Positions 1,496 to 36,172 of a stretch of 64,000 nucleotides of DNA are shown in pieces. The notes under the pieces were generated by a model that was given only the letters and a program-made list of their open reading frames with translations, was not told the origin of the DNA and ran no database searches. A program made the translations under genes and the position numbers. Every line of letters starts with the position of its first letter. Position 1 is the first letter of the stretch. This stretch comes from Lepidodermella squamata. Taxonomy: Eukaryota > Animalia > Gastrotricha. Where the stretch lies: positions 868,001-932,000 of the forward strand of contig JBLDXI010000042.1 of NCBI GenBank assembly GCA_047495785.1. Reading direction: 5' to 3'.

Positions 1496-4400
1496 TCAGC
1501 GCATGCCCGGAACTGCGAAAGCGGCACAATTGATCTCGGCCAATCGCAACTCGCTAAAACTGACAATTTGGTTGAAAATGTTCACGCATGACACACTCCC
1601 ATTCAGCTGCTCTAGCGAATTAGACCATGATCTTGTAAAATGACCATCAGGCTGGTAAAATCTAGATTAACAAGAAGCGGAAACTTACCGCCCTAGAATG
1701 AATTGACCACTTTGTGTGACAGGCCGCTGGCCACTACCCACGGTAGTAATCTGGCTGTCGGCACGAAAATACGTTATAGTGCTGGTCTTAGCATGTATGA
1801 TAGCTAGAAACGACCAGCCTTTTTCCACATCAGTGGCGAAACTAAACGTGGATTGACCATAAGCCCGGATTTTGAAGGTTGAATTTTGTTCTGCTGTGAC
1901 TTTGAGTCCCAGAGTTGTTCCATCAGGAGCGAATTCGATTATCGGCATGTTCGATTGGCTTGACAATGTGGTCAAAAACGCGATGGTGAAACTGGTGGTG
2001 GCTAGCTTGACTTTGTCAGCAGTCACAACTATAGGATCAATCGATGAGTAGACGAAGGCAGTGTTCGCTACGCCAAACGGCCCTTCAGTCTGCGCGAGGG
2101 GTGTAATTGGAGGCGTTGCATCGGCTCTAGGTGCCACAACGTCGTTGAAATCGGACACCAGCGGCCATATAGCTATGTTTGATGGCACAACGGTCCTCAA
2201 TGATTCGCGGTGCCAAATTTTACCGGCGTGAATTTGCGCACACTTCTTCCTAACAATCCATAATTGTGGGATTGACAGAGCTCGATCGAAAATCGATAAG
2301 CACGTTATTTGACCTTGAAGACGGTTAGTGGCGCCGAGATTCGCTCCAACATTCATGGTATCGCTCGTAATGACTGGCCGCGATGAATGCGCCGGCACTG
2401 GCCACATAAAACTAACCCTGTCGCAAACAATCGCCATTTGATTCATTGAACTGTCGTATGAGACCGCGATAAAAACCCAAGGTTGATATGCCCCTGTTAG
2501 TGACTTGCAACTGAACGTTGTCGGCGTAGCTGCACTGCCTGTCAACAATCAATTAATATGGATTCGCAGCCATAAAAACTTCGATCAACGCTGTACCCGA
2601 AACCTCATGATTGTGGAATTACAGTGGCGTAACTACATTGTGTGACAACTTGCGCGTTCTAATTTTTTTTTCTCCAAAGCTTTTGTATGGAGAAGTCATG
2701 CACATAGCAAAAAGTGGTCACACAATGTAGGTCTCCCAAACTGGGCGGGAGGAGGGGGGGGGGGCAGCCTTGGGGCCAGCACATCCTTTCTTTTCTACAT
2801 ATTTGCGTATTTTTCAGACCAAAGACTCCCCCCTGTCGTACCCAGTGTGGATTTTTCCAGCCGGGTTGGCCGGTCCCCCCTGCCCCCTAGGTCACGCCCC
2901 TGTGGAATTACAAATTACAAGTATTTGAAAAAGTTCGAAATTGGGTTGTAGCTTCTGTGTACTGTGCCTATTTAGGTAACCTTACCCTATTACATTATTT
3001 TGGACTTCCTGAAGCTATTTCTATGTGTGATCTAGACTTGAGGGGTCAGAAGCTCGCGAGATATCCATGCTTGTTTCCGCGCCGATGGATTCATTTTCAA
3101 TCCGAAGATTTCAAAAATTATAGCTATCCAGAAAAATAGTTTGACAGATATTACAGATGTCTAGAATATCTGGGAGAGTTATGCCCTTTCTATCGCTCAA
3201 GATGTGACTAGGGATGAATTAGCATGTAGGTGGCCATATGAGCCGCCGAGATTAGGAACATAATATTGATTGATCAATCTAATATCCCCCCTAAATCTAG
3301 GATCAATCTAAAATATCTGCGATTGAATATTAAATTTTCTGAGGTCTTTTAAATAATTGTTGAAAATGGGACTTTACGCCAAACTGAACCTGATCAAACA
3401 ATGGTCCGAAGAAGCAAGGCAATCGGCAGACGAACCCGACTGGCAAAAATTCGACACCATGATCGAAGAATTGCAAACCGAGTATGTCGAGCTGCTTGAA
3501 AGCAAGATGCCGCGAATTATCGACACGAGTCGGCGACTGCACAAAGTGGAACAAGAAGACGCCGGTCATTGTGTCGTCGTTCACGGAGTACCCAACACTG
3601 CCGACTACGACAGCGTGTACGCGATCATGACGGACCTATTCGATTCTTTCGACAACTTCGTGCGAATGGGCCAGTCAAAGTCGTTCAAAGTAAGATTTTG
3701 TTCACAAGCAGCAGCTAACCAAGCGATGCGAAGAACGGCAAACAGAACAGATTTCAAGGTCCAACCGTACAAACCACCACATCAAGTGGTCTATGAGACA
3801 AAGCTCCTGGAACTTCGCGAAAAACAGCCAAACAAGGAAGAACTCAAGTTGGTCGGGGCGACACTGATTTACGAGAATGGCGAAGAGTTTGCCCGGTTCG
3901 ATTCCGTCAAGGATCGAATCGTCTTGAAATCCGAGGTGGACAAAAAAGTAGATGAAAACCAGGACAAGGAGGACAAAGAAAACGAGGTCAAAACAAACAA
4001 CAAGGACAAAGAGGTCAAAACGCTAAAGAAAGACAAAACAACAGCCGGTTCAAAGTTCAACCCCAACGACGGATGTTATGGGTGTGGCGAAATCGGTCAT
4101 TTCATTCGCGAATGTCCAAACAACAACACGCAAAAAGGTGGAACTGGACCACGACAACGGAAACAATTCTTCCCACAACAACGAGTTGACCAGCAGTTCA
4201 AACAACAACAACAACGTCAACACAGCCCGCAATTTCCACCCTTTCCGCAACAAAACACGCAGTACATGTACTCGAACTACCAGCAACAGCAACAACAGCC
4301 TCCGCTCAGCATCCCACTCAACCTGTTACCGGCTCTCTTATCGGCATCACTCCAGCCGTACCTCGGTGGCTACAGCCGTTGAAAAATCGAAACGAGAAAC

Positions 4401-7400
4401 TAACAACAATCTTTCAAACAATCGTTTTTTAATTCTGAATCAGGAGGATGGCGATCAGCGAACCACGGAGTCAGCCAAGGTCGTAAGTGAAGAGCCTGCT
4501 AAGCGCGCGCGTTATAAACCTAAATTTGATCAAAACAATCGGCTTTTCAGGACAGTAGCCATGTGCTCTATCAATATGGAAACTCTCACTAACAAAATTT
4601 GGGATTTTGAAGAAGAATGTTCAGAATTCGAAATTGTAGTATTTCAAGAGCACCGAATGAAAGGCCAAGGGAAAATCAATCTCAGTAACGGTACTTTATA
4701 CTATATCGGGGTGAGCAGTGGTAGAGCTCAAGCCGGGTGTGGTATCTACATCAGACGTTGTCATCAAATAAGGGTGATCAAAATTGAATTCGTAAGTGAA
4801 AGGATTCTGGTAGCTAAACTGAAAGTGTTTGGAGAAAATTTCAACATTATCGTGGTTTATGCCCCGGCAAATAACGATCTGGCAAAGCTAGAGGATTTTA
4901 TTACTCAGGTTCAAGATATTTACTATAGGCTAAATACCGGAGGTGGAAAAACGATGTTGATGGGCGATTTAAACGGAAGAATCATGAGCCAGAAAAATTC
5001 CAATAATGTAGGAGACTGGGCTGATAAAGTGGAAAACCCGAAAGGGGATAAATGGCTAAAATTTGCAAGTAGCAACAATTTATGTTTCGCTAATACTTTC
5101 TATCCTAATTGCGGATACACGTGGCGCAGCCGTGATGGTAGAAATAAAACTTTTATTGACTACATTTTAACATCTATACCCGACAGACAACAAATCCATA
5201 AGTGCTACACTATAGAATACCCTATGCTGAAGTCTGACCATCGAATGATTGTGGCGGAATTTAAATTTTATGTCAAAAATATCAAAAAGCCTGCGGACGC
5301 AAATCCAAAGGTGAAAAATCATCTTCTACGTCAAAAACAACACATCTCGACCTTCAATGAGCACCTTGAAAAGGAAAATCTGAACCAAAATATCAGTAAG
5401 GATCAAACTTCGTCTCTTTCACAAATTTATACTAGAGCAAAAACTGCCATACTTAGGGCAGCGAAGGTTACTTGCGGTGTAAACAACTCACGTGTAATGA
5501 AGAAACCGAAACCTCCTTGGTGGTGCCCAGAAGCAAAAGAGGCTATTCAAAAGGCCAAATATGCTTATGGGCAGTACCAAGAAGGGAAGATGAGCTCTGA
5601 GGAAAACAGAAAAGTTCTCCATTGGAAAAACAAAATTCTCGAAAAAGTAAAAAAAGATTTCGAATCCAAGCAATTCAAAGACCTGGATGACCTCCTCAAA
5701 GATGGCCAAGATTGGGAAAATCTTAAGCGGTTTTGGACTAAAATAAAAAACCTCCGAAATCCTAATTCACGAAACAAAAATATAGATAAAATTGAAACTA
5801 TAAACGGAGAAATTGCTACGGAACTCGATCAAATTTTAGAAGCATTAAAAGATTATTTTATGGAATTGCTAGATGGTCAGGAAATTGATGAACTTATCGC
5901 TATTTGTGACAAACACTTGCACCCACCAACAGAAGAACCAGATATGGAAGGAAATAGTTTACCTGTCCCGAATGAAGGTATAAGCTTGGCAGAGTTAAAA
6001 AACGCTATCAAGCATATGAAAAATGGCAAAGCCGCTGGTATTGACGACATAACCCCCGAAATGATCAAGGCCCTTGATGATACAAATATTAATTGGCTCC
6101 ATGATTTATTAAATAAAGCCTGGGTGGATAAGTTAATCCCAGAGGAATGGTCAACTGCCATCATAGTCCCTCTTTATAAAAACAAAGGTGAAAAATCTCA
6201 ATGCAAAAATTATAGAGGTATCTCGCTTTTAAGTATTGTTGGAAAATTATACGCCATCGTGCTAGAAAGAAAACTTAGGAATGTCATAGGGTCAAAAATT
6301 TCCAACAGACAATTCGGATTTCAACCAAGAAAAGGTACCCGAGACTGTATTTATATATTACGCCAAATTATAGAGAAAATTATTCTTCACAACAAACAAC
6401 TTCACTTAGTATTCATCGATCTAGAGAAAGCGTACGACCTTATTGATAGAGACAAAGTTTGGACAACCCTCAAAGACATGGGTGTGAAACCTGATCTGTT
6501 GGAAGCAGTAAAAAGTTTTTATAGCTCAAATAAGGTAGCGGTTAGAGTAGGCGACAAACTCTCAAAATTTTTCCAAACACAAAAAGGTCTGAGACAAGGT
6601 TGCCCGATGTCACCTCTCCTTTTTATAGCCGTGTTTAACAAAGTATGTGAAAAATTATACAACAGCGAAGGAGGATTTCCCCTCGATGAAAAGAAATTAT
6701 TGAATCTTTTGGCTTTTGCCGACGACGGCACGCTTATAGGTATGACTGACGAGGAGATTCGAACTCTCCTTGACATTTTCAATAAGGCATGTATAGAACT
6801 CGGACTTAAAATTAATGTTGCGAAAACCCAATACATGGTTGTAGGAGGCAAAGGAGATGAAGAACTATTTTTAGGTGATCAGAAACTCGAAAAAGTCGAC
6901 TCTTTTAAATATTTAGGAAGCATAATTACTAATGACGGAAAAATGGATAAAGAACTGAACGCTCGAATCGCCAAGGCAGGGAGCTGCTTTGGGGCAATGA
7001 ACAAATTTATGTGCAACAGAGGCCATATAAGTATAGAAACAAAAATGAAGGTTCTAAATTGTGTGATTATTCCTACCATCATGTATGCGTGTGAAACATG
7101 GAATCTAACAGTCGCACAAGAAAATAGCCTGAATGTAATTGAGATGCGATGGCTTCGAACAATTTTGGGCATAAAATTATTGGACTTCATACCTAACTAC
7201 GACCTCAGATTGGTTTGCGGTGGAGTCATAGAGGTCGGAAGGTTGATAGAAAAACAAAGAATGAGATACTTAGGCCACATTATTCGAGAAGATGAATATA
7301 ACGCTAGCAGCTTGACAAACGCAATGCTAAATTGGAATAACCCCGAAAAATGGAAAAAACCCAAAGGCGCACCTAAAACTACCTGGCGTCACGCAATGAA

Positions 7401-10400
7401 TAGAAGCCTCAAAAAAATAGGATTGGTCAAATTACAATACAAAAATATTTATGAAGGACCCCCGAAAGTTGGGAGACCGGCGAAAACAGCGGTCGTGATA
7501 AGGGTTGAAACTAAGGAAGTAGCTGATTGGGAACTGACGCAAATAGCAGCGCGAGATCGCGACGAATGGCGAATGCTAACTTTAACAATAGCGAATTTCG
7601 AATTTCATGCGAAAAGCAGGCTCTTCATGAATGTGACCGATGGCGGCACCCCGTGATCGCTGATCGTCACCCTCCCCTAAACCTTTGCGGTAAAACGGTT
7701 CCTCTTGTTGTGCGAATATTACCATCACAAGCCAACAATGAACCAGCGGAGGAGGAAAAATAAAACTTTTCATTGTTTCATTGTTTTCATTGTTTCATTG
7801 TTTCAATCTAATATTGATTTTTGGATTCTCCGTACTCGATTTAGTATTAGAAAGATCTTCTTGAGAGAACATAACTGCCCAAAGTCATTTGAGGAGCTTC
7901 CATGGCAAGTTAGGACCTAGTTCACCTAGTTCACCCTGTCCTTAGACGAGGGAAGAAGATCTTTTGAGACCAACAGGGTGAGGCTGTTCTCTCGAAAACT
8001 GCTTTATTAAATCGAGTGCGGAGAATCCAAAAATCAATATTAGAAGCTTCCAGCTATTACAGTTAGAGATCGAGAGAGTTCACCAAGATGACCCTAGATC
8101 TCCCCTAAGGGGGTACTAAGGCGTCGGAGGGGCTAAAAAATAAATCTTTCTGACCTCTTGTTTTTTTAACGGTTTCTAGGTAATTTGACCACGCTGAGTT
8201 CAGCGCAATTCACAGAAATGATCCATCCCTCATAGTTTTTGCGCTGCGACGTAGGGACGTAGCCTAGGACGACGCCGCGACTGCGCGCGCGCTCGTTGCC
8301 AAACGAAGAAACAAAATCCCGTTGCTAATGTAAACACAATATTTCTAAAATTCTAAAATCTTTATTATTTTACTTTTTAAATTTGTTTTCAAATGAAAAT
8401 TTAATTTGCAGTGGAAAACATGAACGCGAAATTTGAATTTCTCGTCGTTCACTTTTTTAGGGGGGGGGGCTGCAAAAAAGCTAAAATTCTGTGTGATTTT
8501 CTGAATGTAGGCTCATCATAATTTTAAGAGCCCGGCTTATGAATTTTGAAAAATTTTCGAAAAACTATTTTTTCGACCAAATTGAGGTCTGAGCTAAATT
8601 ACGGAGACCCCCCCCCCCCGTCATGAATTATGCTCCTCAATTTTTGGCGCGAAAAGCTAGAATGGCTGACCATCATGTCAGCCCATTGGTTGAAAATCAG
8701 AGGCTAAGCCTGAGCGCCTACTGGAAGGACTGTTTAGTGTGTTTACCCTGCCTTGAATCCCGCTGCTCTGTGGGTGACCAGTGAAAAATTAGTGATATTT
8801 TTCAAATCTAATAGTGATTTCTTTCGAGGACAAGAACAAATACTACCTGTGTAAATTTGTAAGGCGTTCGACGTAGGATTGTAATAGATTCGGAATAGCG
8901 CTGTGCTTTCGTAGAACTCAATCACTGGTACATCGGATAGAGGGAAATCCGCAAAGCCGACATAGGCAGAGATCGTGAATGAACGGTCGAGGACGATTTT
9001 GCTATCTGACACTTTAAAATAGCCGGCTGAATCGCCCACAGAAAGCGCTGTGTTACGATAGCCGAACGGCCCATAGTCGAACGACATGGAGGAGCTGCCA
9101 ACAATCGAAGCCCCAATATTATTTCCACTAATATCGCTGGCGCCGTAATTCGGCGTGAGAGCGAAGAAAGCCAGGTCCTGTGGCAACCCGAAAGGACGCT
9201 CTAGAAGGAAGTGGAAGAATTTTATTCTCGAAAAGGCACGGTGATGAAACAAACGCACCCTCGTTGCACAGTTCCAAAGAAGCGTAGATGGTATCGCTAT
9301 CTTGCACCTGAGTCATACTATGTTGAATGAGCTCTTAACAACAATTCATGCTCACAAAGTTTTGAGGACAATTGTTCGCCACGGAAACGCACGTAGCCGC
9401 CATCAGAAGTTCATTTGTGCACAGCTTGTACTGAAATATAAATATGAATGAATCAGCTTATCATTTCAAAATTCAAAATTACTTACGGACGACATGCAGG
9501 CGTTGTAATTCCAGGTGAAGGTCCCGTTTCCAAATACAGTTGTCTAAACACAAATAGTTAACAAAAGAAATAAACAGACACTCCTAAGGTGATCACACCG
9601 TGGGCGCTCCTCCCGGGCAAGATGGCGAATCCTGACAGAGTCCAGCGGTAGCGCACAGATAGGCATTCTGAAATTCGATTGAAAAAACTCGTTCGGAATT
9701 TAGTTACCACAGCTCGGTATTACCGCGTTATTGCATGCACTTTCGGACGTGTAAGTAACATTTCCAATCTATCAAAAATGTCGAATTTGGGGAGTTTGCT
9801 ATCACAGGTACTCAAGTTGACTCACACTTATCAGCGGGTTGGGACAAGACTGGCCAGGGAAGCATCCATTGAAGGACTTGTCGCCATTGTAGCAGTGGAA
9901 GTACAACGCATCTGATTTTGAGAAATTTATAAAGAAAAATTCGATATTTTTGTTGAAGATGGGCCTTACTTTTGCAAAAGACGAAAGAATCAAAGTTGAA
10001 GCCAGAAGCACTCGCAATCTATGCAAAACCGAATTCATGACTTGGAAGCTATAGAGTAACACTTACAGTTGGAGTTGGACAATCGGAGCTAATCGGGATG
10101 CAAACTGCCAGCAACTTTGTGTTCGAATCAATGCAGCTCTTATGCTTCCCCTGAGAAAGAATCAAGTGAAAGAATTGCGATAGAAATAAAAGGCAGAGTC
10201 ACCTGAATTGCAGATACACAAGCTTGGAAGTTGGTCGCAAAAGGTCCAGAGTCTGAGCCAACTCTTCCGAACTGTAATATAATATGATGGTTGTAGCAAA
10301 TTATCAACAATGTAGTTATTACGTCGTATTTGCCAGTGCCGCTTGGGCATGATTCAACGCAACTACCTCCGGTTGTAGCATCGTAACACATGCTGATAGA

Positions 10401-20300: not shown

Positions 20301-23103
20301 TATATCAAATGAACCGTTGACATTCCTTGCGGACAAGTAGGCGAATCTTGGCACACTCCAGCTGAAGCACATTGATAGGCGCTCTATAAAGAACGGAATG
20401 TGAAGCGTATAGGCAAAAAGTAAAATTCGTACCGATGTCACGCAGGCGCTCCCAGACGAATATGTAACACCTCCAATCTGCAAAATAGCAAAAAATATAA
20501 ATCTACCAAAAGTTGCCAACAGCTAACATTGACTAGGGGATTCGGACAAGATGGACCAACATAGCAGCCTTTGTAAGCCGTAGCGTTATCGTAACAGTGA
20601 ACGTATTCGATAGCTGGTAAACAAGACTCAATAAATCGAGCAAGTCTTAGCTTTAAACCAACATTTGCAAATATTGAATGAGTCATAAACAAGCCCATCT
20701 GAGCTAGCGATCTGGAAAATGTGATCCTGGAGATTAGGAAGCTTAACATTGAGTCGAATACTCACAGTCGGAGCTGGACAAGTCGTATTGACGGGGACGC
20801 AAATGGACAGGAAATTAGTATTCGATTCGAAGCATCTTTTATGCTTTCCCTTTAAAAACAAAGAAAAATGACGAGGTGATGAGATCAACTTTCTTACCTG
20901 GACCGAAGCTACACATGTTTGAAAGTTAGTCGCAAATTGCGTCGAGCTAGATCCAATGCTTCCGAACTGAAAAGTTTAAAACAGTTTGAACGACCCTGAA
21001 ATCTGAAATTCCACAATAATAGCCAACAATATTATTTTCAACAAAAACGAAAATAAAATGAAAATAATTAAATTTTTGAATGTCCTAAAATTATATTATA
21101 CGTCAAATTTCCCGGTTCCGTTCGAGCATGAATCAATGCAGCTACCACCGGTTGTAGAATCGTAGCACATGTTGATTGACTGTCGAAACAAAAGATTTGA
21201 AAAACTCAAAATTGCGGAGACTCAAAACAACTGACCCCAGCTTCACAAGATGATTTCGTCGAGAATACTATCGCACCAGGTTTCTATGTATTACAGATTT
21301 TGATATGTGGGAAGGGGATATTTCAGAAAAAATTCACGTCAGTTCCGTCGCATGCGAGCTGAGCAGGCTTGCAACCGGGAAATGCCATCCCTGCTGAGCC
21401 GAAGCAGCGCCGATGTGGAAAGAAGGACTGCGGGGCTGGGAAACAATGAAATTGATTCTAATTAAGTTGTAAATTCTAGTTTAAAAACCTGATTGGCATT
21501 CTCCGAGGTTTGAGAACGTAACATCAGTAGAAAATTGGTTGGTACTACCAGCTAGGCAACTTTCGCTGCCATCATTTGGTATACATTTGACCAGCGAATA
21601 GGTTTGCGAGTTCAAGCAGAATTGATGCGGTTTCTAAATGTCGTAAAATAATTTAAAAAAAAATAAGGAAATTATTTATATTTTCCTTGTATATCGGGAG
21701 ATAGCTCAGGCACTGTGCATAATTCGTACCGAAATCGCTAACGCTGTTGAAAGTTGTAACCTGGAACGAGCAATATAAATACGAGCAATGCTGATCCGAT
21801 TAATTCCCGACCAGACTCATCGGCGACCGACATATTCCACGGCAAAGTAAATCTGATGCGGATTTGCACAGAGCGGCTGGCTGTAATCGATAATATTCAT
21901 AACTAGGTTCAACTTAGCCACCGCAACCAACCCCAGCAGTGCAATGTGTTTTGTCGATATAGATTCCGCCGCTGAAATCCTGGAAGAAAGAATTTAATTA
22001 AATGAATTAACTAATAAAATTTAATTTCAAATTTATTATTAAATATTACTATTAATTTTCAAATAATTGATTAATTGATTGAATTTATTTATTTTTAATT
22101 TATTTCAATCTATTATTTTCCAGTAGAAGATTAAAAACAACCAAACATGGAAATTAAGCTTCAAAACCTATTAGTTCAAGAATGAATTTTAGTTTAGCCA
22201 AATAGACACACCTGTGACTGCGTCGATTCGTTGCATCCTGGTTTAGCCAACAGGCAACCAGCAAACGATCGATCCGTCCTGGAGAAGCATCGCACGTGGG
22301 GCGAATAATCAGGGCTTTTCACAGCTAAACACCAATTAGAAATTAGAAATGATTTGTGTTCAATCGGAAAAATTGAATTCGCAACCATTGATTCGCGATA
22401 GGCAGTCAGTCAAAGTTATTATGTTGTTCAATTCCCCCTGAAACATGTATGAATAATTGCGAAATTGAGACAGCCAGTAAAGGGTTAAATTCTAACCCAG
22501 CCATTCGGGCATTGACCATCCATTGGGACACAGGTCAGAGCAGAGCTATTACCGCTGGGTTGTCCTGTATGGAAAAGGTTCTCATTTAAAGTCATTGAAA
22601 CGCGAAAAGCAAACCATATACGGTCGAATCGTGGCGATGCAGGCGTCATATCTTGGCTTGAATTTCAGACCCGTAAAATTCAAATACTGTTGAGAATCAA
22701 ATAAATTTCTAAATTTTTTCTTTACTAATAAAAAATTACCGGGACTTCCTCCTTTGAACAAGAAACCAATTGAGGGAGGCATCTCAGAGTGAACAGCTTC
22801 GGGTTGTAGCAGCTGCGAGCTGACTGAATTGCAGGGTTGGTGATAATGTTTACGAAAATCCTCAGCTCAACTTACGCCTTGTGTACAACTAGTGGAATCA
22901 GGAAGCGCTGGGCCCAGCTATTCGCATTTGTATTGAAAGAGAAGCTGAGTTTTAAAGATCCAGCTTACCTGGACCTCTTCGAATAGGTCACAGTCAGGTT
23001 TGCAGTCGACGAATGCGTCGTTCAATCGAGAAACACATCGCTTGAAGCAGCCAACGCTGCTAAAAGCGAGCGTGGCTAGAAAAAGGGTTAATAAAAAATT
23101 CAT
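17392..23103 (-). pseudogene. Copy B of the Cys-module/LamG gene (12 modules); probable pseudogene or splice-rescued allele
   Basis: Exon-for-exon paralog of copy A (MNFLLTLFLATLAFSSVGCFKRC... ending INCAAFSIPEMR*). Exon 5 (22564-22497) is 68 nt versus 78 nt, a frameshift. The exon-10 donor at 21685 reads GA instead of GT. Confidence 0.75.
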
Positions 23104-24540: not shown

Positions 24541-24626
24541 ATCAGCGGGTCCTTGAGCGCCTTTCCCGTAGTGACGCCACGGTGGAAGCCTTGCATGGTA
24601 CTTGACCCGTAGCTCTAGGAATTCAC

Positions 24627-24690
24627 CCAGTGTTTCTTGTCGATGTAGATTCCACCGCTGAAAGCCTGGAAGCCAGAAAAGCTCTCATTA
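24627..24690 (-). pseudogene. Isolated relic of exon 8 of the Cys-module gene
   Basis: cag|AFSGGIYIDKKHW|gtgaat versus copy A AFSGGIYINKKHCSVG|gtgagt; the flanking intron is also similar to 11207-11230. Confidence 0.75.
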
Positions 24691-25045
24691 TATGGGCCAT
24701 TTCAAATTATTTGTTTCATAATTTTACATGAATAAGCAAGTAAGGAATATTCAAGTTAAACGTGATTGATGGTAAATATGAAAACACTTTGTTATTGCAT
24801 TTTTTTTTAATTTGAAATTCCGGTCCGCTTGAATGGTTTCACAATAAACACGTTCACACTCATATTTTTTAGTTATGATGTGATTTTGCCGACTTTTATT
24901 CGTCAAAATCACTCAAATCTGCAACAGAAAATGGCGAATCAAACATTTCGGCTCTCCTTGAAAATTACATCTAGAATCATCGGAATGTAAAAAAACCGAG
25001 ACACAAAAAATTGTTTGAATTTATTCGCAATTTCACATTTTTTTA

Positions 25046-26098: not shown

Positions 26099-29000
26099 TT
26101 AGCGCATGCCCGGAACTGCGAAGGCGGCGCAATTGATCTCGACGATTCGCATCTGGCCGAAAGTGAGAACTTGGTTGAATATGTTCAAGCAATTCATACC
26201 AACATAGAGTAGATCTTGCGGATTTGCCCAAGATCTGACAAAAGGATGATCAACCGGTTACAGTTAGCTGCTTAAAGAATAGAAACTTACCGCCCTATAA
26301 TGAACTGACCACTTTTCGTAATGGGCCGCATACCACTCCCTATCTCGCGACCCTTGCCGTCGGCATAGAAGCTCAGCTTATCGCCGTTCGCATCGAGCGT
26401 GGCTGCTAGAAACAACCATGTAGATTGTAATGAACTGGAAATGGAAGTTGTTGAATTTTCGCCATACGGCCGGATGCTATAAGAGGCAATTGATTCTGCT
26501 ATGAGTTTAAGTCCCAGCGTCGCTGCGTCAGGGGCGTATTCAAGTATCGGCTCGTTTGGATATAAAGCCCGCATCGTTAACATTGCGATAGTGAAACTAC
26601 CGTTGTCCAGTTTCACTTTGTCCGCGGTCACAACTATAGGATCAGAATATCTGAAAAAGAATGCCGTTTTCTGTCCGCCAAAGGGCCCAGAAATATGCAT
26701 TAGCGTCGTGTTAGCGTTTGGGGGCGTTGCGTCGGCTCTAGGATCGACAACATCGTTGAAATCCGACACTAATGGCCAAATAGCTATGTTTGAAGGCAGA
26801 AGGGTGGTCAATGCTTCGGGAAGCCAAGTTTTGCCGGCGTGAATTTGCAGACACTTCTTCCTCAAAATCCACAATTGTTCGTACGATAAAGCTTTATCGC
26901 AAATCGATGCACACGTTATTTGACCCGGAAGACTCACGTCGTTGGCGAAATTCCTGGAAAATTTGATCTTACTGCTCGTAATGACTGTTGAACGACGCGA
27001 AAAATCAGAGACTTTGTCGCAAATTGCAGCTAAAAATTGAGTTGTTTCATTGTAAGTGACGGCGATAAAGACCCATGGCTGAGATGCCCCATTTAATGCA
27101 GCGCAGATGACCACCCTCGCAGCAGCCGCATCATCTGAAAAAATAATTGAGCGAAATTGATATCAAAGAATTTGAACTAGCCTAAAAAAAGCTTTGAATT
27201 TGCGGTTGGATCCAAAATTGGTTTTAGCCAAAATGACTGGGTGGTATTCTGGAAGCAGTTTACATTTGAACCTCTAGTCTTATAAGACCAAACCAAAAAT
27301 ATGTTTGGTCTAAACAAAACCAAGAGCCTATTAGTCTTGCGTAAACAACTATGGTCAAGAATAGTGGCAACGGGGCCGGACGTCAACTTCAAGGGCTGCA
27401 AGCAGACGGCAGACTTGCTGGAAATTCGTCTCGTTTCGAGCGATAAATCGGATCACCTCTGTAAGATGTTGGCATTGGACGGAGCCAAAGTCATTCCGCA
27501 ACGACCGGCCAAATGCCGAATCGCTCGGGCCATTTTTGAACGCCGTTACGTCATCTCTCATCGAGGCTGCTAGGTCATCGCCTATTAGCCGACATCAGAC
27601 CCTGTCCTTAGTTGTATTCTTAGTCTTGGATCGGTATAGAGTACGCGTTACTTCATATATGCAAACTGTGTTGAACTGGTCCGTATTCACGTGAGTTCTA
27701 ATATCGTTTCTAGAACTCGGGTTTTTTCTCGTTCATGAGAAGCTGAAGCCCGATTTAAGTAAAAAATACCGCTCATACGCTATCAATACGCCCTTCTTAC
27801 CATGCCATAGTGCTGCCGTTTCTACGATGATTCGAGCGGTATTACAGACAAGGCTTTTAGGTTTACATCCCGTTAGGTCTTTACATCAATAAAACCGCTT
27901 CGAGAATACCACCCACTATTGATTTCAACCAGCAAAAAGCGAGAAAAATTTTGGAGAATGGACACTCTCCACAAAAAAATGCTATCCAAAATCCAAAACC
28001 TATGAAAATTGACGATACAGCGGGCTAAATTTGAATTTTCTTGTCCCACGTGGCCGAGCTGGGGGATGATACCCTCCATCCCCCTGAAAGTCGCACACTG
28101 GGCTTAAAATCCTCACTACCATCAATATATAAAATATCCGCTTTAATTTTATAATTTTAACTTCATTTCAAAAATGAATTTTCTTTGCGATTCTGGAATG
28201 AAAATGTAGATGGCCAGAGGGCTTTTCTCGTGGTTGCAAGGTGTTTACCTTGAGGTAAACATTATCAATCTAGCTTTGCTACCGGAAGCGGAGCGGAAGC
28301 GGAGCGGAACACCATGGGTCGCAGATGTTCAGCTGAATCATGAAAAAAGGTCCGAATTTCGGTGGGAAAGTAAACAAAGAAATTTATTTTTCTTCGATCG
28401 ATATCGTTAAATTAGAGCTGGTTCTCTCAAGTTTGTTGATTGAACCAGAAAGAAAATATTACAGCGAACAAGGTGGTTATTTTTTCGTGATTTAAAGATT
28501 TTTTTAAATTGCTCAAAATGTCCTTTATAGTTTTTGAGCTTGCAAATAAAATGAAAATACCATTACTTTTAATTTGGACACCTAAGCCACTAGCCACACA
28601 TGTGATTCACGCGCAAGGTTCACGCCGTAGTCTGGTTCAGATTCATGCGCATGAATCATGTGTTTCTTTGCTAACAAGCGAAAAGTAATGGTATTTTCCC
28701 ACCGAGAATCCTCAATAATGTTTTAAAATTCAGTAAAAAATCGTTGAAGGTCAAACTTGGGCTCAAAAGGAAGCTCACCCCCAGCCGCGATTAGATCCAT
28801 CGACAATCGTTTCAATTTCACTTTCATTCTTGTCGATTTCCCATTTTATTTGCAAGCTCAAAAACTATAAAGGACATTTTGAGCAATTTAAAAAATCTTT
28901 AAATCACGAAAAAATAACCACCTTGTTCGCTGTAATATTTTCTTTCTGGTTCCATCAACAAACTTGAGAGAACCAGCTCTAATTTAACGATATCGATCGA

Positions 29001-32000
29001 AGAAAAATAAATTTCTTTGTTTACTTTCCCACCGAAATTCGGACCTTTTTTCATGATTCAGCTGAACATCTGCGACCCATGGTGTTCCGCTCTTTTCTCG
29101 TGAGTAGTCAGTCTATCTTAAATTATGTCTATGGTCGCAGCCCAGTTTTTCAATAGTTTTTCTCGCTCCGCTCGAAAACATTCAAATTTGCTAGCACATT
29201 CCCTTCTCGCTACGCTCGACTCATCTCGCTTTGCTCGATCGAAAACCTTGCCCAGTGATGCTCGCTTTGCTCGCGTTTCGCGGCAGGGCAAGGGTTTCGG
29301 TCGCTGAAATGCATTGCTCGCTTCGCTCGCATCTTTTACAAAATCCAGATTACAAGTGTTATTATGTAACGGTAGTTTTTCGGTAGTACAGAAATATTCG
29401 TATTATGAGCAACAAGCAACGAACGCTAACCGCGTGACAGTGTGCGAAGTAGAATTCGAGAGCTGATGTGTTTTCTACTTGTTCTCTAAGACCCGGCCGA
29501 AGAAACCAAAGGGCTGTGGTTTTTTCAGCCTACCTTTGGTTGGAGTCCAGGAGCTGGGGTGTCGCGCCCCTGTCGCACCCTGCCTCGTGATCTACAAGCA
29601 AGATCTAAACTTAGTCTTACTATTGGACTTTTCTTTTCGAGGATTTGGCGGCCAGAAATTTTCGCGGATCGCCTCACCTACCGCCAAATGGGAAATTTGT
29701 TTTGAAAATAGGGTACCCGGGCCCTAATTCACGGAATTTTAAGAGGTGAAATTCTGATTATCTGTCGCCTTAATTGGGGCCATTTTCCGAGTTCAAACAA
29801 ATCAATGAATACTATGTCGTACCGCTATCATTACGTTAACCCAAATGCAATATGCCCAAGATGGCGATATATGTTATTAGGGTTATTATTAGGTTATTAT
29901 TAGGTAACCCATTTGAAATAGATGGCTGTTTATAATCTATAACGACAACGCATTGCACAATGACGCCTAATTAGCTGATGCGATGACGCATTTCTATCTT
30001 CTGGAAAATTGATTCATTTTTCTATTCTATTTTAAATGCCAAGACCCTTACTGCCTCGTGACGCTGCTGTGACGAACGACTTGTTCTCAGGCTGGTAGGA
30101 TTACAGGTTTTTCTGCAGATCGTAAGCACAACGCGCAACATGAGACAGTTTTTCTGTGTCGCTTAAGGCAAGCTGAAATACCGAGAAGCTGAGAGGAGAG
30201 ATGCGGATAACTCGCATGTCTTGATCTGAGAAGGCTTTATCGAACGAGCGAAGAAGTATCACAAAGAAAACAGCTACGCTGGAAGTACGGCGGTGATGAA
30301 TTTCTTCAAGCAACGATACTTTGTCGTACCCAGAAAGCCAATCGAAGAGATGGTGGCCATCCTGTATCAGCGGCAAAAGGCAACCGAAGCTGGCTTCCAA
30401 ATAATGATGGAAGCTGGCGGATGGAAGCCAATGATGGCAGACGGCTTGTGAAATCGACGACGAATTGTTTGTTCTGTTGGTGAAAGTGTCGGCACGGGCC
30501 ATGCATAGCCAAACGCAACAAACATCTCGAGAAGATTGAATCTAGGAAGCTGAACCTTAGGAAAGGAGGAGTTTATCAGGTCATTTCTTTTGACATCGTT
30601 TACAGGCAGCGAAGAAGCGAACGTTGAATTTGAAAACGTCAGCGATGATCCGACAATAATGAAGAGGATCGCAACGACCGTCTTCGGGTTTACCGAAGTA
30701 ACTGAAGGGCAATTTTCATTTCGTCGCCTATAAACTTGACAACCGATCGCTCGGGCAATAATATCCCGCCAATTCGTGCTCGATCGGTTTACTTCGAGAA
30801 TTATTTGAAGAATCGGATGTCTGCTAAATACATCTGGCAAGCAAAGGTTCGAATGAAAGCCGACCCCAAGGTTGGTGACTTCGTTGTGATTCCTATCTCA
30901 AAGTGATCCGAAAAACTGCTTGGCGATAGTCGTCTCTATCAAAAATTTGGGTACACGAGTAGGTATCATTGATGCTAATTTTGGCATGTACGAACTTCGC
31001 ACTGGAGTGTTCGCAAATGACAGGGTGATTTTCAACCGGCCGCTGTCCTTGCAAGAAAAATGGCCTCGAGTGTGCAATGAAATGTCATCCGGAGATGGCT
31101 TGCAATAACAAGACCTTAGCACAGAAAGCTGAAGAGAAGGCAGGCGGAAAAGCTGGATTACAGTCAAGAAATTCAATTAGGGTTTATTCCGAAATTATTG
31201 CCTCTTGATGTAGCGTTTTAGCTAATAATTATTAGCCAAGTTATTAAATTGTTTATCAAGTAGGTTTTTAGAGCAATTGTTCCTTAGGGTAACCCAATTC
31301 CCAATTGGGGCGGATATAGCACATTGGTACGACAAATATACATGATCAATAAATGAAGAATGAATCAGAAGGCTTACCCGTAAATATTCTCAGCTGGTTC
31401 TTCGCAGGATTGTAATGTATTCGGAAAAGCGCCGTGTTGTCGTAGAACTCAAAGATTGGAATGTCTGTATCAGGGAAATCCACGAAGGCAGCATAAACAG
31501 AGACTGTGAATGAACTATTGGGAACGAGCTTGCTGCTTGCCACCTCAAAATAGCCGGTTGAATTTCCAACAGAAAGCGCTGTATTAGAGTAGTCGAACGG
31601 CCCGCTTACGAACGACAGGGAGGAGCCACCAATGAACGCTGATGTAAGATTATTTTCATTGATATCACGAATGCCGTATTCTTGCGCGAGAGGGAAGAAA
31701 GCTAGGCTGCGGGGTAAGTTGAAAGGAGTCACTGTAAGAAGAATGTTTTTCTTAGAAAAAGCAATTGATCAAATAAACGAACGTTGATTGCATTCTTCCA
31801 AGGTGGTGTACGTGGTACTATTGGCTTGTGTCTAAGTAATGGAATGCTGACATGATATAAACTCGGATTAGCAAGACGTCGCTCTCACCCAATTTTGCGG
31901 ACAGTTTTCCGCCGAGGAAACGCAAGTAGCCTCCATCAGCAGCTTATTCGTGCAGAGCTTGTACTGAAATAATTATAAGTAATGATAATCCAGGATGGTC

Positions 32001-35000
32001 AAGCAGCTAAGGGCTACAATTTAAAAATTCTTTTACATTTCCAATACAGTGTGGTCTGATACTAGTGCAGGGGGCGAGGTTCATTCATGTTTTTTAATGA
32101 GGAGCTTGGAAAAATTGAAATTTTTTAAGAATTGCGACAATGGAAAGGCAAATATTTAAATTCTTCAATTTTTCCAAGCTCCTCATTAAAAAACATGAAT
32201 GAACTTCGCCCCCTGCGCAAGTATCAGACCACACTGTAGTCGAATTCTAAAGAAATTCTGAAATTCTTCTCAGTTTATCGAATGCAAAGTTTTCGAAACA
32301 AGTACCTGGATATCTGTTGCCTCAGTCTTGCAGGCATTGTGATTTTCTCTGAAAGACGTCGAGTTGCCGCCATAGCCGTAGATTTTAACCTGACATCAAG
32401 CAATTGCGTTACGAATCCGAAATCTAATTAAATGGCTCGCTTACCCGGGTACCACTCGTGAAAATGCCATAGCACTGTTTGCCATTGCTTGTGACACATT
32501 GGGCGGCTCTCTGGTGGAGAAATATCGTATCAAATGTGATCGGAAGTCAAAGCCAATTAGCCTTATAAATCATAAAAATTTCTTATATAATCATGTTATC
32601 AGAATTTGATTGTTGAACAAAAGCGAATTCCAGCTTAATACATTTAATGAAATTGAAAAAGTCGAAAGTTGATCTGGAAACAATCTTTTACCCCTCTTAA
32701 GCAGTTTGCTCTGTTGGTGAACGTCGCAGATGAAAATTCTCGAGTTTCAGATCCAACCTGACAGCCCGTTGTCTCGAGGCGGCAATCAATGAAGCTGCCG
32801 TTAGACGAGCTGAAGCACCTGACATGCGGTTTCTCACTGTCCGGAACTTGAACTACACCGTACAGCATGAACAAGATTCAATAATTACAAAAATCGAATA
32901 TAAACTCACGTGAAGTCCCAGAGATGCACAGGCTTAAATTAGAGTATGGGCTGCCATCATCGAGCTATAAAAAATTGGAGGAAAATTAAGATCAGCTAGG
33001 TGAATGTAAATTGCTTCAAACCCAGTTCTCAGGACAGGTGGAGTTGATTGGAACACATGTCTTCACCACTCCGTTGTCTTTGCATCGTTTGAAAGTTTGA
33101 TTCTGAACACATTGAGAAAATTTACTAAATATTTACTATTTTAGCGCGATTAATTTACCGCGAATTTCGATCTCGCGCTATTGCAAGCGGCTAAGCTGTC
33201 TTTCAGCGTGGTATTCCTGAACCAATCAAGCTAAAAAATATAATTAAATTAAATTAAAACCCAGTATCCAGCGGATAGAGCAGGAGATTTGCCTCGATTT
33301 CACTATCAGCAGCTGGCTCGCCACTCAAGTTACAGTTGCCAAGGCCAGGATTGCAACGTGTTGTTAGGGCGCCGTATTTGTAGCACATTTTAGCATTCTA
33401 TTTTAGAGATTGATAACATTAGCATTATAGACACCTGAATTTCAGATATCTTACCCCTGATCGGCACGTTGCTAGATCAGCGAACAAAGGGCCCCACTAG
33501 ATTAAAAAATTGAATGAAAAATTGATTAATATAATAATTTAAATAGAGCATCCCGCCCTAAATTCGGCCACTGTTTTGGGTTTTCCTAGTTTGCCAGCCA
33601 TGTGAATTTTTAGAAAATATTTGGCAAAGACAGACTTATAGATGAGTTCTTGGGCTACCGAATGCTGGTTTTCACGCCGGACGATTTTATTTTGAATTAT
33701 GGTGTGCTTTTATTTTAAATTTTTTAGTGTGCTTCACTTTTCACTTTTTAGTGGCATCATTGGAACGACGTCAAGATCAGGCAGCTACCACCCAGGCTCG
33801 TTTGGAAATACCAAAAAGCTGATTGGCAAAAGATACGAAAACAGGTGGCCAACAAGTTGAGGAAGCACGAGGTGGATCGACCATCTGCAGAAAGCCTGGC
33901 GAACAGGACTTTGGAAACAATTATTCGAAGCATGCGCGACAACATCCCGAGGGAGGTGTTAAAGCACACCGAATCCTCGGTACCGTGGTGGAACGATGAA
34001 TGTCTGCAAATGTTCCAGGAGATGAACGAGAGCCTCGACAAAGACAGGGAGGAAGAATTACGGCGAAGAATCGATGAGGTTCATGAAGACTACAAGCGAT
34101 CGCTCAAAAATAAACTCACCAAACGGATATTCCTCCGAAACGATATCACTAGCTCATACGGCAAGTACAGCTCGCTGTAAAACCACACACAGGGAGAATT
34201 CCGCCGCTAGAGAATGGAGAGGATGACTCAGGGCGAATTCTGCTGATCACGAACGATGTAGAGAAAGCTGAATTGCTGGTCGAGTCGAAGATGAATCTGC
34301 CTAAAGGCATGGGGGAATGGAATGATGATTGCGAGCCTGCGACTATCCTATTGGAAATAAAGGTCGAACAACGAAACATTAAGGACGAACTGAAATCCTT
34401 GAATCTCGGAAAATCCCCTGGACCCAGCGGTATCGGGCCAATCCCGCTTCGAAAGCTAGCCAACTGGATAGCGGCTCCTCTAACGACGCTGTGGCAGAAA
34501 ATGCTGGAGGAAGGGGTTTGGTCATCACCATTCAAAATGGTCCATATCTGCCCAATAAACAAAAAAAATCAAAATCAGATAAGGCCAATTATCGCCCGGT
34601 TGGAATGGGCGAGATAATCGGCAAGGTCTTCGAACGAATTGTAGCGGCTGAAAACGGCAAAAGCGAACAGAGTCATCCCTACCGACCAAGCAGCTTTCAT
34701 GGCCGGTTGTAGCACTAGCGATACGCAATTCGCAGTGGTGATCGACATATTATCGGCATTTAACAACCGAGAAATCTTCATACTTCGCCAAACCGACGTA
34801 AGTGGTGCTTTCGATCGTGTTGACCGCCCACTTCTGCTTGAAATCCTGTGGAGATGCGGCATAAGAGGGAAAGTCCATAAATTACTGAACGTTTTTTCCG
34901 AGTTCTAGTCGCCGGAGCAGCGTCAAGTCTCAGGCAAGAAGATGCCGGCATCTGCCAAGGCAGCGCCCTCGGCCCCACGTTATGGTTGATCTTCTATTCG

Positions 35001-36172
35001 GGAATCTACCGGGCGGCCTCTCGGGCCTTGAAGGCCTCGGAAACTTACACCTTCGCCGACGATTTTAACCTTGGAGGAGATGAAATCCAACTAGTCGAAG
35101 GAGGGGAAGAGATGGCCATGGCATGGGCGGCTTCACACAGGGTTTCGATGGGCCCAAAAAAGCGCGTTGACACGGTCTTCATTTACCCTCGCTCGAATGA
35201 AGCCTCGCGGGTGCCGAGAAGCAAGAAAAGCCAACGACAAATCAGCCAACAACTACCGTTCTACTAGGCCTTACACTTGACTCGGGGCTGACGGGCCGAG
35301 CTGGAAGTCGCCCACTGCCGCCGCTGACAACAAACATCAAGAAGATCGGCAACTCGTCACCAGTTTCAACTTCGAATCCACTCGAGATTCGGCGGCGAAC
35401 ACTCAAAAGCTCCAATCGAGCCATACGCTCGCCTCCTATAGTTCATTGAAGCCTGGAAAACTCCATCGTAACGTATTCCCGCAGCGTATAAACATTAATC
35501 TATTCAAGCGTGAAACTAACACTCTAGGCTTGCCATAAGATCGCTTAAATCAAGGCTGAACATTGTTTTGTAAATAATAAAAAAATGGCTAATTTTGTAG
35601 TTCACCTATACTCCTGGCCGGAATTAGGGATCCGTGTGCCCTAATTTCGGCCACCTCGTCCAGGTACCTTAAATTTGATACCGTTAAATTCGTCTCGACA
35701 AGCTGAGTAAGGAAATCGCCCTTTTATCTTTACCTGGGAGCCTTCCCTTTACGACGTGATGCCTGAAGCTCTGGTGATTATGGTAACAAAGCACTCAAGA
35801 AACGACATGAGCACCAGCATTAAGAATTATTTTTGTGGGCGACGTAAATTAAGGGTAATTTAATTTAAATTCAAGTGAAGACTAATTTCTAAGAGAAATA
35901 TTTAGTATATGAAACTGAGAGGTCAAATTTTTAATGCGGATCATAATTTCAATGTTCCATTTCCATCGATGATATCAAAAGTTGTTGAATTAAATTGACT
36001 TAAATGTAACAAATACCTGATATTCGGTAATAGGATCACAGGTTGGGTTGTTATCGCGGCAAGAAGTAAATGCGTTGTTGGTCACTTGGAAGCATCGCTT
36101 GAAAACCTGGCCCGATGCCTGGCCGATGAACCCGAACAAAATAACGAGAATTATTAAAATAAAGCTTCTCAT
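26099..36172 (-). CDS. Copy C: signal peptide, 6 four-Cys modules and two LamG-like domains (14 exons)
   Basis: Exons 36172-36017, 33496-33455, 33397-about 33261 (boundary uncertain), about 33230-33159, 33102-33022, 32964-32910, 32852-32692, 32510-32445, 32389-32306, 31963-31889, 31831-31783, 31731-31378, 27134-26291, 26234-26099. Ends INCAAFAVPGMR*, as copy A does. Confidence 0.75.
28233..29091. mobile_element. Foldback/MULE-like non-autonomous element with TIRs of about 250 bp
   Basis: 28302-about 28552 and about 28842-29092 are near-perfect inverted arms. Direct repeat CTTTTCTCGTG at 28222-28232 and 29092-29102. Nested inner inverted repeat at 28554-28570 and 28681-28697. Confidence 0.85.
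29440..29580. repeat. Dispersed repeat; inverted copy at about 36755-36910
   Basis: gtgtgcgaagtag...gttttctacttgtt.tctaagaccc.gcc...gagctggggtgtcgcg is shared in opposite orientation. Confidence 0.7.
30100..31180 (+). mobile_element. Highly decayed LTR-retrotransposon (BEL/Pao-like) integrase-region remnant
   Basis: Broken plus-strand peptides YHKENSYAGSTAVMNFFKQRYFVV (integrase Zn-binding-like) and PKVGDFVVIP...YELRTG...NRPL (Pao C-terminus-like), with many stops. Confidence 0.4.
32047..32236. mobile_element. Tc1/mariner-type MITE (190 bp)
   Basis: TA|CAGTGTGGTCTGATAC...GTATCAGACCACACTG|TA, TIRs of about 70 bp. Confidence 0.9.
33757..35586 (+). mobile_element. Decayed, 5'-truncated LINE (RT fragments) in intron 1 of copy C
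   Basis: Frameshifted pieces WKYQKADW, PWWNDEC, KSPGPSGI, NYRPV, DVSGAFDRV, CQGSALGP, YTFADD; A-rich 3' end near 35580. Confidence 0.85.

What the first reader, a model, noticed from the sequence alone, without database searches (positions are those of the whole stretch)
1496..36172. Tandem secreted-lectin-like family that varies by whole triplets and can be spliced combinatorially
Seen: copies A and B have 4 triplets. Copy C has exactly 2 (modules 1-5 joined to module 12), so the triplet register is kept. Fifteen exons of copy A are 42-84 nt, multiples of 3 and phase 0-0, so each could be skipped in frame. Further relics lie at 60-383 and 24627-24690. Established: symmetric micro-exons generate isoform diversity in schistosome MEG genes, and birth-and-death arrays are typical of invertebrate immune, adhesive and mucus proteins. 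Inference: a diversifying recognition or adhesion protein system.
Basis: partly seen in the sequence, partly recalled or inferred. Interest (0 to 1): 0.8.

Follow-up and report, generated by a model that had tools for sequence, protein, structure and literature searches.

The report
Three stalk-and-head secreted lectin-like genes
Three neighbouring genes of an unidentified invertebrate encode secreted proteins with a rod of small four-cysteine modules (in blocks of three) ending in two lectin-fold domains; the copies differ by whole blocks and by swapped halves, so their variety is made in the DNA, and I found no evidence for variety made by splicing.

Summary
Three minus-strand paralogues lie exactly at 1496-36172.

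- **Copy A** is intact: 26 exons, 1019 aa, all introns GT-AG. It has exactly 15 phase 0-0 exons of 42-84 nt.
- **Copy B** has the same 26 exons. In this assembly it carries a 10-nt frameshifting deletion and a GA donor. Another public run holds 10 nt at the deletion site that restore the frame.
- **Copy C** has two triplets instead of four, in register.

Each protein has a signal peptide, then a stalk of 4-Cys modules of three recurring types (X-Y-Z), then two complete Laminin_G_3 domains.

- Each skippable exon encodes half a module, with 1 or 3 cysteines.
- Introns are minimal (46-64 nt) and unconserved.
- The few public cDNA contigs join neighbouring exons as predicted, with no skipping.

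Diversity is visible at the DNA level instead. A shares its stalk with B (64% aa) but its heads with C (55%). The A/C similarity starts at one intron, as unequal crossing-over would give. dN/dS is below 1 throughout (stalk 0.18, heads 0.28-0.46).

This scan has already noted the same stalk family on other DNA of this genome. The head has only remote public relatives (best 26% identity).

The parts
1496..12695 (-). Gene A, intact: 26 exons, 1019 aa, made of signal peptide, CX3C...CX3C cap, 11.5 four-Cys modules (4 triplets) and 2 LamG_3 domains
   Evidence: Exon model with all GT-AG introns and an open CDS. Pfam PF13385 scores 33.4 bits against a cut-off of 27.6 on the big 3' ORF.
9259..12695 (-). 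Gene A stalk exons E1-E23. Sizes are 135; 42, 84, 72, 78, 52|113; 48, 69, 75, 145|98; 48, 78, 69, 84, 49|86; 45, 69, 57, 75, 49| ('|' marks a phase-1 intron). Introns are 46-64 nt except one of 586 nt.
8847..9200 (-). Gene A exon 24: N-terminal half of LamG domain 1, entered through a phase-1 intron
   Evidence: After splicing, LamG1 (residues 577-793) aligns over its full length with LamG_3 repeats of a Lingula protein.
1496..2538 (-). Gene A exons 25 (2538-1689) and 26 (1631-1496): rest of LamG1 and all of LamG2, then the stop codon
   Evidence: ESM Atlas features score 0.98 to Laminin_G_3 clusters.
3357..7656 (+). LINE-type retrotransposon with a zf-CCHC ORF and a 1192-aa endonuclease/RT ORF, inside gene A's 6.3-kb intron 24 and antisense to the gene
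   Evidence: ORFs; zf-CCHC; RT and endonuclease families in its relatives.
17392..23103 (-). Gene B: the same 26-exon plan as A. It is open throughout except for two lesions in this assembly.
22497..22564 (-). Gene B exon 5 is 68 nt instead of 78. The 10-nt deletion between 22552 and 22553 shifts the frame. A contig of run X2 carries 10 extra bases there, and they restore the frame and the module's first b-half cysteine.
   Evidence: table 4.
21684..21685 (-). Gene B intron 10 begins GA where A has GT. No canonical in-frame alternative keeps the module.
26099..36172 (-). Gene C: 14 exons and about 752-765 aa, with 2 triplets plus 2 LamG_3 domains. TE debris lies in intron 1 (36016-33497) and in the intron before E25 (31377-27135).
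33159..33397 (-). Gene C exons 3 and 4. There is no GT at the conserved donor (GCTGCT). A GT donor after 33261 joined to an AG acceptor before 33216 (44-nt intron) keeps the frame and all cysteines.
31889..31963 (-). Gene C exon 'E22', the second half of its fifth module. The A-like part of C starts here. A/C DNA similarity begins at 31971 in C and 9438 in A, just upstream of this exon's acceptor.
24628..24744 (-). Relic: a copy of gene A's exon 8 with its acceptor and about 70 nt of upstream intron. It is truncated after 13 codons, and the Cys codon is changed to Trp.
58..385 (.). Non-coding relic: an 83% identical copy of the last ~150 nt of gene C's intron before E25 plus about 7 nt of the exon, with an inverted second piece

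Best explanation
This is a tandem array of three paralogous genes for secreted stalk-and-head proteins.

Architecture (shown). A signal peptide and a short Cys cap are followed by a disulfide-rich rod built from one unrecognised 40-55-aa four-Cys module. The module comes in three subtypes arranged as X-Y-Z super-repeats. The protein ends in two ConA-like (Laminin_G_3) domains. Almost every module is encoded by a pair of mini-exons, a one-Cys half and a three-Cys half, separated by minimal introns. The Z module of each triplet is split by a phase-1 intron, and the heads are attached across a phase-1 intron.

Source of variation (inferred). Variation among copies arises in the DNA, by unequal crossing-over between equivalent introns of different triplets and by recombination between paralogues. 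This changes stalk length in steps of three modules and recombines stalks with heads. Copy C is best read as a divergent stalk (M1 to the first half of M5) joined to an A-like M11b-M12a-LamG-LamG tail. Copies are also lost: one exon relic survives, and B has a frameshifted allele that is polymorphic.

Function (inferred, not shown). The protein is probably a soluble multivalent binding protein. The LamG heads would recognise a glycan or protein ligand, and the rigid stalk would set reach or spacing. An odd cysteine count may allow disulfide-linked oligomers. This would place it in recognition, agglutination or matrix assembly.
For: Shown:
- Three collinear copies.
- A complete canonical model for A and equivalent exon plans in B and C.
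- The only strongly hydrophobic stretch is N-terminal.
- Period-3 module types.
- PF13385 above its cut-off in all three copies. The spliced A and B proteins align as two complete ~175-215-aa domains with LamG_3 proteins; for C only the second domain aligned. Atlas features score 0.98.
- Mosaic identities: stalk A-B 63.5% against A-C 38%; heads A-C 54.5% against A-B 43.5%. The DNA breakpoint lies at the E22 acceptor.
- Purifying selection: dN/dS 0.18 in the stalk and 0.28-0.46 in the heads.
- A relic exon and a polymorphic 10-nt indel in B.
- Spliced cDNA contigs of family members join E9|E10, E10|E11 and Ya|Yb exactly as modelled.

Notes from this scan on other DNA of the genome report the same stalk with other heads. 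I did not test those.
Against: - No ligand, expression site or protein data exist.
- Pfam and exhaustive searches could only be run on contiguous exons, not on the spliced stalk.
- dS between A and B is near saturation, so their ratios are rough.
- The direction of the recombination (which copy is the recombinant, and whether 2 or 4 triplets is ancestral) is not resolved by three sequences.
- B may be a null allele, and C's exon 3/4 junction is unverified.
Confidence: 0.6

Rival explanations
1. The symmetric mini-exons are cassette exons, skipped in many combinations to give a repertoire of isoforms from each gene, as in schistosome micro-exon genes.
For: In copy A, 15 exons are phase 0-0 and multiples of 3. 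Whole modules (pairs of exons) or whole triplets could be removed in frame while keeping cysteine parity. MEGs do use symmetric small exons for protein variation (PMC4350168). Public data here are contigs, which drop rare variants.
Against: - Each symmetric exon holds 1 or 3 of a module's 4 cysteines.
- Symmetry follows from repeat duplication in any case.
- Introns are 46-64 nt and 37-68% identical between A and B, with no conserved elements.
- cDNA contigs show neighbouring exons joined, and no exon-skipping joint was listed among those shown.
- Exon sizes are conserved one-for-one between A and B at dS above 1.
- Exons are 42-151 nt, and the symmetric ones make up 32% of the CDS, unlike MEGs.
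Confidence: 0.1
2. The proteins are structural or adhesive extracellular material (mucus, cuticle, egg coat or glue). Repeat number would tune mechanical length, and the LamG domains would cross-link matrix components rather than recognise foreign targets.
For: The architecture is a secreted, Cys-rich rod, with 30-33% Ser/Thr/Pro/Gly and 5-9 N-glycosylation sequons in the stalk. LamG domains are common in matrix proteins (general knowledge). The stalk is under purifying selection. A GT6 glycosyltransferase gene is the immediate neighbour.
Against: There are no low-complexity or mucin-like tracts. The heads evolve faster than the stalk and have localised patches with pN/pS near 1, which fits ligand-facing surfaces better than scaffolding. 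No expression data exist.
Confidence: 0.25
3. The cluster is largely decaying. Only relics of a once larger array remain, and B (and perhaps C) are pseudogenes of no present function.
For: B has a frameshift and a GA donor. C lacks the conserved E3 donor and one cysteine in E9. There are relic fragments and TEs in the introns.
Against: - A is fully intact.
- B is open in all 26 exons apart from the two lesions, and another run has 10 nt at the deletion site that restore the frame.
- C is open with a canonical alternative junction.
- dN/dS is well below 1.
- Family transcripts exist.
Confidence: 0.05

Closest known systems
Schistosome micro-exon genes (MEGs)
   Same: Both encode secreted products. 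Both have runs of small symmetric exons, so exon loss keeps the frame, and both occur as gene families.
   Different: MEG exons are much smaller and make up most of the CDS. Their products are small, unstructured peptides, and alternative splicing has been demonstrated (PMC4350168). Here the exons are 42-151 nt and encode halves of disulfide modules. The symmetric ones are 32% of a 1019-aa protein with lectin-fold heads. No alternative splicing was seen. MEGs appear restricted to flatworms, whereas this genome's P450 matches rotifers best.
Selectins and other lectins on a stalk of repeated 4-Cys (CCP/sushi) modules (from my own knowledge)
   Same: Both have a lectin-type head on a rod of small 4-Cys modules. 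Paralogues differ in module number, modules sit on their own exons, and the head is joined through a phase-1 boundary.
   Different: The module here matches no Pfam family in the pieces I could test. It is split over two exons and is organised in X-Y-Z triplets. The head is C-terminal and of LamG_3 type, not an N-terminal C-type lectin domain. There is no membrane anchor.
Collectins and ficolins (from my own knowledge)
   Same: Both are soluble and built as N-terminal Cys region, then stalk, then C-terminal recognition head. This is a likely model for how the present proteins work.
   Different: Their stalk is a collagen triple helix and their heads are C-type lectin or fibrinogen domains. Oligomerisation here is only guessed, from an odd cysteine count.
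Multi-LamG_3 proteins of other invertebrates, e.g. Lingula anatina XP_013404145.1
   Same: This is the closest public sequence to the heads, with four Laminin_G_3 domains (E = 9.5e-9).
   Different: Identity is only 26%. It was found by a search with the head alone, and Pfam finds only LamG_3 and Pentaxin in it, so it offers no evidence of a shared stalk.
Other members of the same stalk family in this genome (scan notes s1-421451, s1-374052, s1-410401 and others)
   Same: They are reported to have the same unrecognised 4-Cys stalk, the same tandem arrangement and a secreted product. Stalks of six modules are reported there.
   Different: They are reported to carry other heads (C-type lectin, CBM42-like, EGF). 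Here all three heads are double LamG, and two copies have twelve module positions. I did not re-examine those loci.

Membership tests
Laminin_G_3 / ConA-like lectin-glucanase superfamily (heads) | Match to the Pfam PF13385 profile above its gathering score | tested here: met
   A scores 33.4 bits, B 32.3 and C 32.2 against a cut-off of 27.6, on the large 3' ORFs.
Laminin_G_3 / ConA-like lectin-glucanase superfamily (heads) | Complete domain of about 150-215 aa, not a fragment | tested here: met
   After splicing, A residues 577-793 and 831-1004 (and the equivalent parts of B) align end to end with LamG_3 domains of P0001, P0003 and P0004. For C only the second domain (561-736) aligned. Atlas features score 0.98, with 31 of 40 hits in LamG_3 clusters.
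Laminin_G_3 / ConA-like lectin-glucanase superfamily (heads) | Beta-sandwich jelly-roll fold | not tested
   Each domain is split by an intron, so no contiguous reference could be folded.
Lectin (carbohydrate-binding protein) | Demonstrated or residue-level predicted sugar binding | not testable with these tools
   LamG_3 domains bind varied ligands, so 'lectin-like' refers to the fold only.
Micro-exon genes (MEG type) | Most of the coding region is made of very small symmetric exons | tested here: not met
   The smallest exon is 42 nt. The 15 symmetric exons sum to 993 of 3060 nt, or 32%. The definition is from PMC4350168.
Micro-exon genes (MEG type) | Isoform pools produced by alternative use of the symmetric exons | tested here: inconclusive
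   Only short contigs of one RNA-like run were available. They show consecutive exons joined and no skipping among the joints listed (20 were found, 15 shown). Contigs hide rare forms.
Secreted protein | N-terminal signal peptide and no other membrane span | tested here: met
   The highest 19-residue hydropathy windows are at residues 1-6 in all three proteins, and nowhere else reaches those values. No dedicated signal-peptide predictor was available.
Birth-and-death tandem gene family | Tandem paralogues of unequal divergence together with pseudogenes or relics | tested here: met
   Three copies at 33-64% aa identity, a relic of exon 8, a polymorphic frameshift in B and mosaic stalk/head histories.
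Known Cys-repeat domains (EGF, CCP, TSP1, LDLa and others) for the stalk module | Profile match of the module | tested here: inconclusive
   Ten contiguous stalk pieces of 26-53 aa gave no Pfam match better than E = 0.046. A 53-aa piece gave no Atlas hit. A whole module or the whole stalk has no contiguous reference and was not searched.

The most novel reading that the evidence does not exclude
Whole modules or whole X-Y-Z triplets, rather than single half-module exons, are optionally spliced out. Each gene would then yield stalks of several lengths, giving a MEG/Dscam-like isoform repertoire outside flatworms and arthropods. The polymorphic lesions in B would be tolerated because the damaged exons can be skipped.
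Probability: 0.08. Interest if true: 0.75.

Novelty: new variant of a known kind. Interest (0 to 1): 0.38.

Why it matters
The locus is a clean natural example of how a modular extracellular protein family diversifies. Mini-exon pairs encode an unrecognised disulfide module, and a three-module super-repeat sets the step size of length change. Recombination at equivalent introns mixes stalks and heads.

If the heads prove to be pattern-recognition domains, the family would be a lineage-specific soluble receptor system in a poorly sampled invertebrate lineage. The neighbouring copies, with one intact and one broken allele of B, would allow direct tests of copy-number and allele effects.

The attractive idea of combinatorial splicing remains only a possibility.

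Tried and rejected
1. **Isoforms from public reads.** Both run searches and the single read-laying run (6000 letters) gave only Logan contigs. X1 proved to hold spliced cDNA of family members but carries no isoform information.

2. **Larvacean/oikosin idea.** It was prompted by short introns, by a GA donor in B and an apparent GC donor in C, and by the oikosin literature. I dropped it. The P450 exon in the window matches rotifer CYP3045 proteins best, at 32-34%. C also has a canonical GT-AG alternative. B's GA donor is therefore more likely a lesion than a lineage habit.

3. **Taxon from the LINE ORF.** The best relative is only 30% identical, so this was uninformative.

4. **Word-index protein search with A's exon 25.** It found nothing. 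The exhaustive search found five remote LamG_3 proteins only.

5. **Pfam and Atlas on stalk pieces.** They found nothing usable.

6. **Reading C as a simple deletion derivative of A or B.** I rejected this because C's stalk is only 33-38% identical to theirs while its heads are closest to A's.

7. **Literature searches** for a described family of this architecture found none. This was a limited search, not proof of absence.

8. **Whole-protein tools.** The spliced proteins have no reference, so I did not submit them to Pfam, structure prediction or PDB searches.
Full report
**What is there**

The window is eukaryotic, about 41% GC, with many short introns. Self-comparison at DNA and translated level shows three collinear paralogous units on the minus strand, at roughly 1.5-12.7 kb (A), 17.4-23.1 kb (B) and 26.1-36.2 kb (C). 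The large 3' ORFs of all three match Pfam Laminin_G_3 (PF13385) above its gathering score.

**Gene models**

I aligned the minus strands of A and B, read the exons by eye and verified them by script.

- **Gene A** (12695..1496) has 26 exons, 25 GT-AG introns and an open CDS of 3060 nt (1019 aa).
- **Stalk exon sizes** are 135; 42, 84, 72, 78, 52|113; 48, 69, 75, 145|98; 48, 78, 69, 84, 49|86; 45, 69, 57, 75, 49|. The bar marks a phase-1 intron. LamG exons of 354, 850 and 136 nt follow.
- **Introns** are 46-64 nt, apart from one of 586 nt that holds degenerate TTAGGG-like repeats and a 6.3-kb intron that holds a LINE.
- **Ends.** The finding's coordinates are A's stop codon and C's start codon.

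**Protein architecture**

- **N-terminus.** Each protein starts with a hydrophobic N-terminus, and no other hydrophobic span reaches those values. A short cap follows, with CX3C...CX3C in A and B.
- **Stalk.** The stalk is built of 40-55-aa four-Cys modules. Each is encoded by a one-Cys exon followed by a three-Cys exon.
- **Module types.** Modules fall into three types that recur in the order X-Y-Z. Within A, and within B, same-type modules score higher than different-type ones (p = 5e-6 and 1e-5).
- **Phase-1 introns.** The Z module is always the one split by a phase-1 intron. The last Z module is only its first half, after which a phase-1 intron leads into the heads.
- **Heads.** Once spliced, A and B show two complete LamG_3 domains (A residues about 577-793 and 831-1004). 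They align end to end with LamG_3 domains of remote relatives; for C only the second domain aligned in this test.

**Copies B and C**

*Gene B* (23103..17392) has the same 26 exons, with nearly identical sizes. In this assembly it carries two lesions.

- A 10-nt deletion in exon 5 shifts the frame.
- Intron 10 begins GA instead of GT. No canonical in-frame splice rescues that junction.

Elsewhere all of B's exons are open. A contig of public run X2 carries 10 extra bases exactly at the deletion site, and they restore the frame and the missing cysteine (table 4). The frameshift is therefore polymorphic. X2 shares 99% of sampled words with A's region but only 65% with B's. B's region is thus much more divergent between the two sources.

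*Gene C* (36172..26099) has 14 exons and two triplets.

- Its modules match A's M1, M2, M3 and M4 best.
- Its fifth module has a second half of A's M11 type, at 61% identity over the whole module.
- It then has the M12 half-module.
- Exons 7 and 8 are fused, and one cysteine is missing in exon 9.
- The conserved donor of exon 3 is absent. However, a GT donor 53 nt downstream joined to an AG acceptor inside exon 4 gives a 44-nt intron that keeps the frame and all cysteines.

**Relics**

At 24630-24668 there is a truncated copy of exon 8 with its acceptor. Its Cys codon has become Trp. The stretch at 58-385 is 83% identical to the last ~150 nt of C's intron before exon 25, plus about 7 nt of exon, with an inverted second piece. 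It contains no coding part. Scan notes place further family members just before the window's start.

**Evolutionary pattern**

| Comparison | Stalk aa identity | Head aa identity |
|---|---|---|
| A-B | 63.5% | 43.5% |
| A-C | 38% | 54.5% |
| B-C | 33% | 43% |

A and B are close in the stalk, where modules at the same position are 49-78% identical. C's stalk is distant from both. In the heads, A is closest to C, with dS 0.76.

A/C DNA similarity begins just upstream of the acceptor of exon 22 (9438 in A, 31971 in C). That point lies in the intron inside a Y module. Recombination between the equivalent introns of module 5 and module 11 would give exactly C's structure and keep the triplet register. 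I infer this; it is not shown. Which copy is the recombinant, and whether two or four triplets is ancestral, remain open. Scan notes report six-module stalks elsewhere in the genome.

Nei-Gojobori dN/dS values:

| Region | Pair | dN/dS |
|---|---|---|
| Stalk | A-B | 0.18 |
| Heads | A-B | 0.28 |
| Heads | A-C | 0.46 |

Two windows have pN/pS near 1, one in each LamG domain (A residues 720-779 and 920-959), in both comparisons. Selection is therefore purifying overall, weaker on the heads, with possible variable patches.

**Splicing and expression**

Only contigs were available. Run X1 covers mainly exons. Three of its features read as spliced cDNA:

- a joint that removes intron 10;
- loose ends that translate to the end of exon 9 joined to the start of exon 10;
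- the end of a Y first-half exon joined to an exon-22-type second half.

These contigs come from family members 88-99% identical to B. The family is therefore transcribed, and the modelled junctions are used. Nothing can be said about isoforms from these data.

Four points weigh against regulated combinatorial splicing.

- Every symmetric exon carries 1 or 3 of a module's 4 cysteines.
- Exon symmetry is the expected by-product of repeat duplication.
- Introns are of near-minimal length.
- Introns are only 37-68% identical between A and B, against 49-82% for exons.

**Relatives and taxon**

- The word-index search with A's 282-aa exon 25 found nothing.
- An exhaustive HMMER scan of 1.84 billion representatives found five proteins at E up to 1e-3. 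The best is a Lingula protein with four LamG_3 domains, at 26% identity.
- Ten stalk pieces gave no meaningful Pfam match, and a 53-aa piece gave no Atlas hit.
- The window's P450 exon matches rotifer CYP3045 proteins best, at 32-34%.
- The LINE's best relative is only 30% identical.

The animal therefore belongs to a poorly sampled lineage, possibly near rotifers. I found no paper describing such a family. This scan has already noted the same stalk family, with other heads, on other DNA of this genome.

**Verdict**

The family, its triplet-wise variation and its birth-and-death dynamics are real. The proposed mechanism of combinatorial splicing is unsupported and structurally unlikely at the single-exon level, though it has not been formally tested. 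Diversity is demonstrably produced by recombination and duplication in the DNA. Function, whether soluble recognition or matrix binding, is inferred from the architecture only.

Noticed in passing
window 25045-25550 and 37259-37758: A 500-bp direct duplication, 94% identical, brackets gene C. It is the C-terminal catalytic exon of a GT6 (ABO-type) glycosyltransferase (PF03414, E = 1e-33). The full gene lies at about 37260-38573, and the copy at 25046-25492 is an isolated fragment. A further fragment at 23601-23708 matches 39243-39350 at 89%, out of order, which suggests a complex segmental rearrangement around B and C.
   Followed up: partly
window 3357-7656 (+): An apparently intact LINE sits antisense inside gene A's intron 24. 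It has a zinc-knuckle ORF (341 aa) and an overlapping 1192-aa endonuclease/RT ORF. Its closest public relative is only 30% identical.
   Followed up: partly
window about 11555-11670 (minus strand, gene A intron 7): A degenerate tract of TTAGGG-like telomeric repeats lies inside the one long stalk intron of A. It is absent from B's equivalent intron.
   Followed up: no
window 28302-28553 / 28842-29092 and about 32040-32240: Two hairpin elements lie in gene C's introns. One is a 252-bp inverted repeat at 99% identity. The other is a MITE-like palindrome between C's exons 'E10/21' and 'E22'.
   Followed up: no
window 48966-49994 (-): A single-exon 342-aa gene of the SAM-dependent carboxyl methyltransferase family (PF03492, E = 4e-35), a family best known from plants. 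It is a possible horizontal acquisition.
   Followed up: no
window 52421-52837 (-): A 138-aa ORF with weak similarity (32% over 57 aa, E = 1e-3) to the second LamG domain of gene B. It has no Pfam match and may be a divergent LamG exon of another gene.
   Followed up: partly
window 21770/22209 (gene B): One contig of run X2 joins these two points and skips 438 nt, which hold exons 8 and 9 and the introns around them. Only 29 nt match on the shorter side. It could be a paralogue or allele lacking one X module, or a chance join. This is unexplained.
   Followed up: no
window 44095-46503 (-) and 41015-43010 (+): An 802-aa single-exon class-C GPCR (ANF_receptor plus 7tm_3) and a cytochrome P450 whose best matches are rotifer CYP3045 proteins. 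The P450 is the only taxonomic hint in the window.
   Followed up: partly
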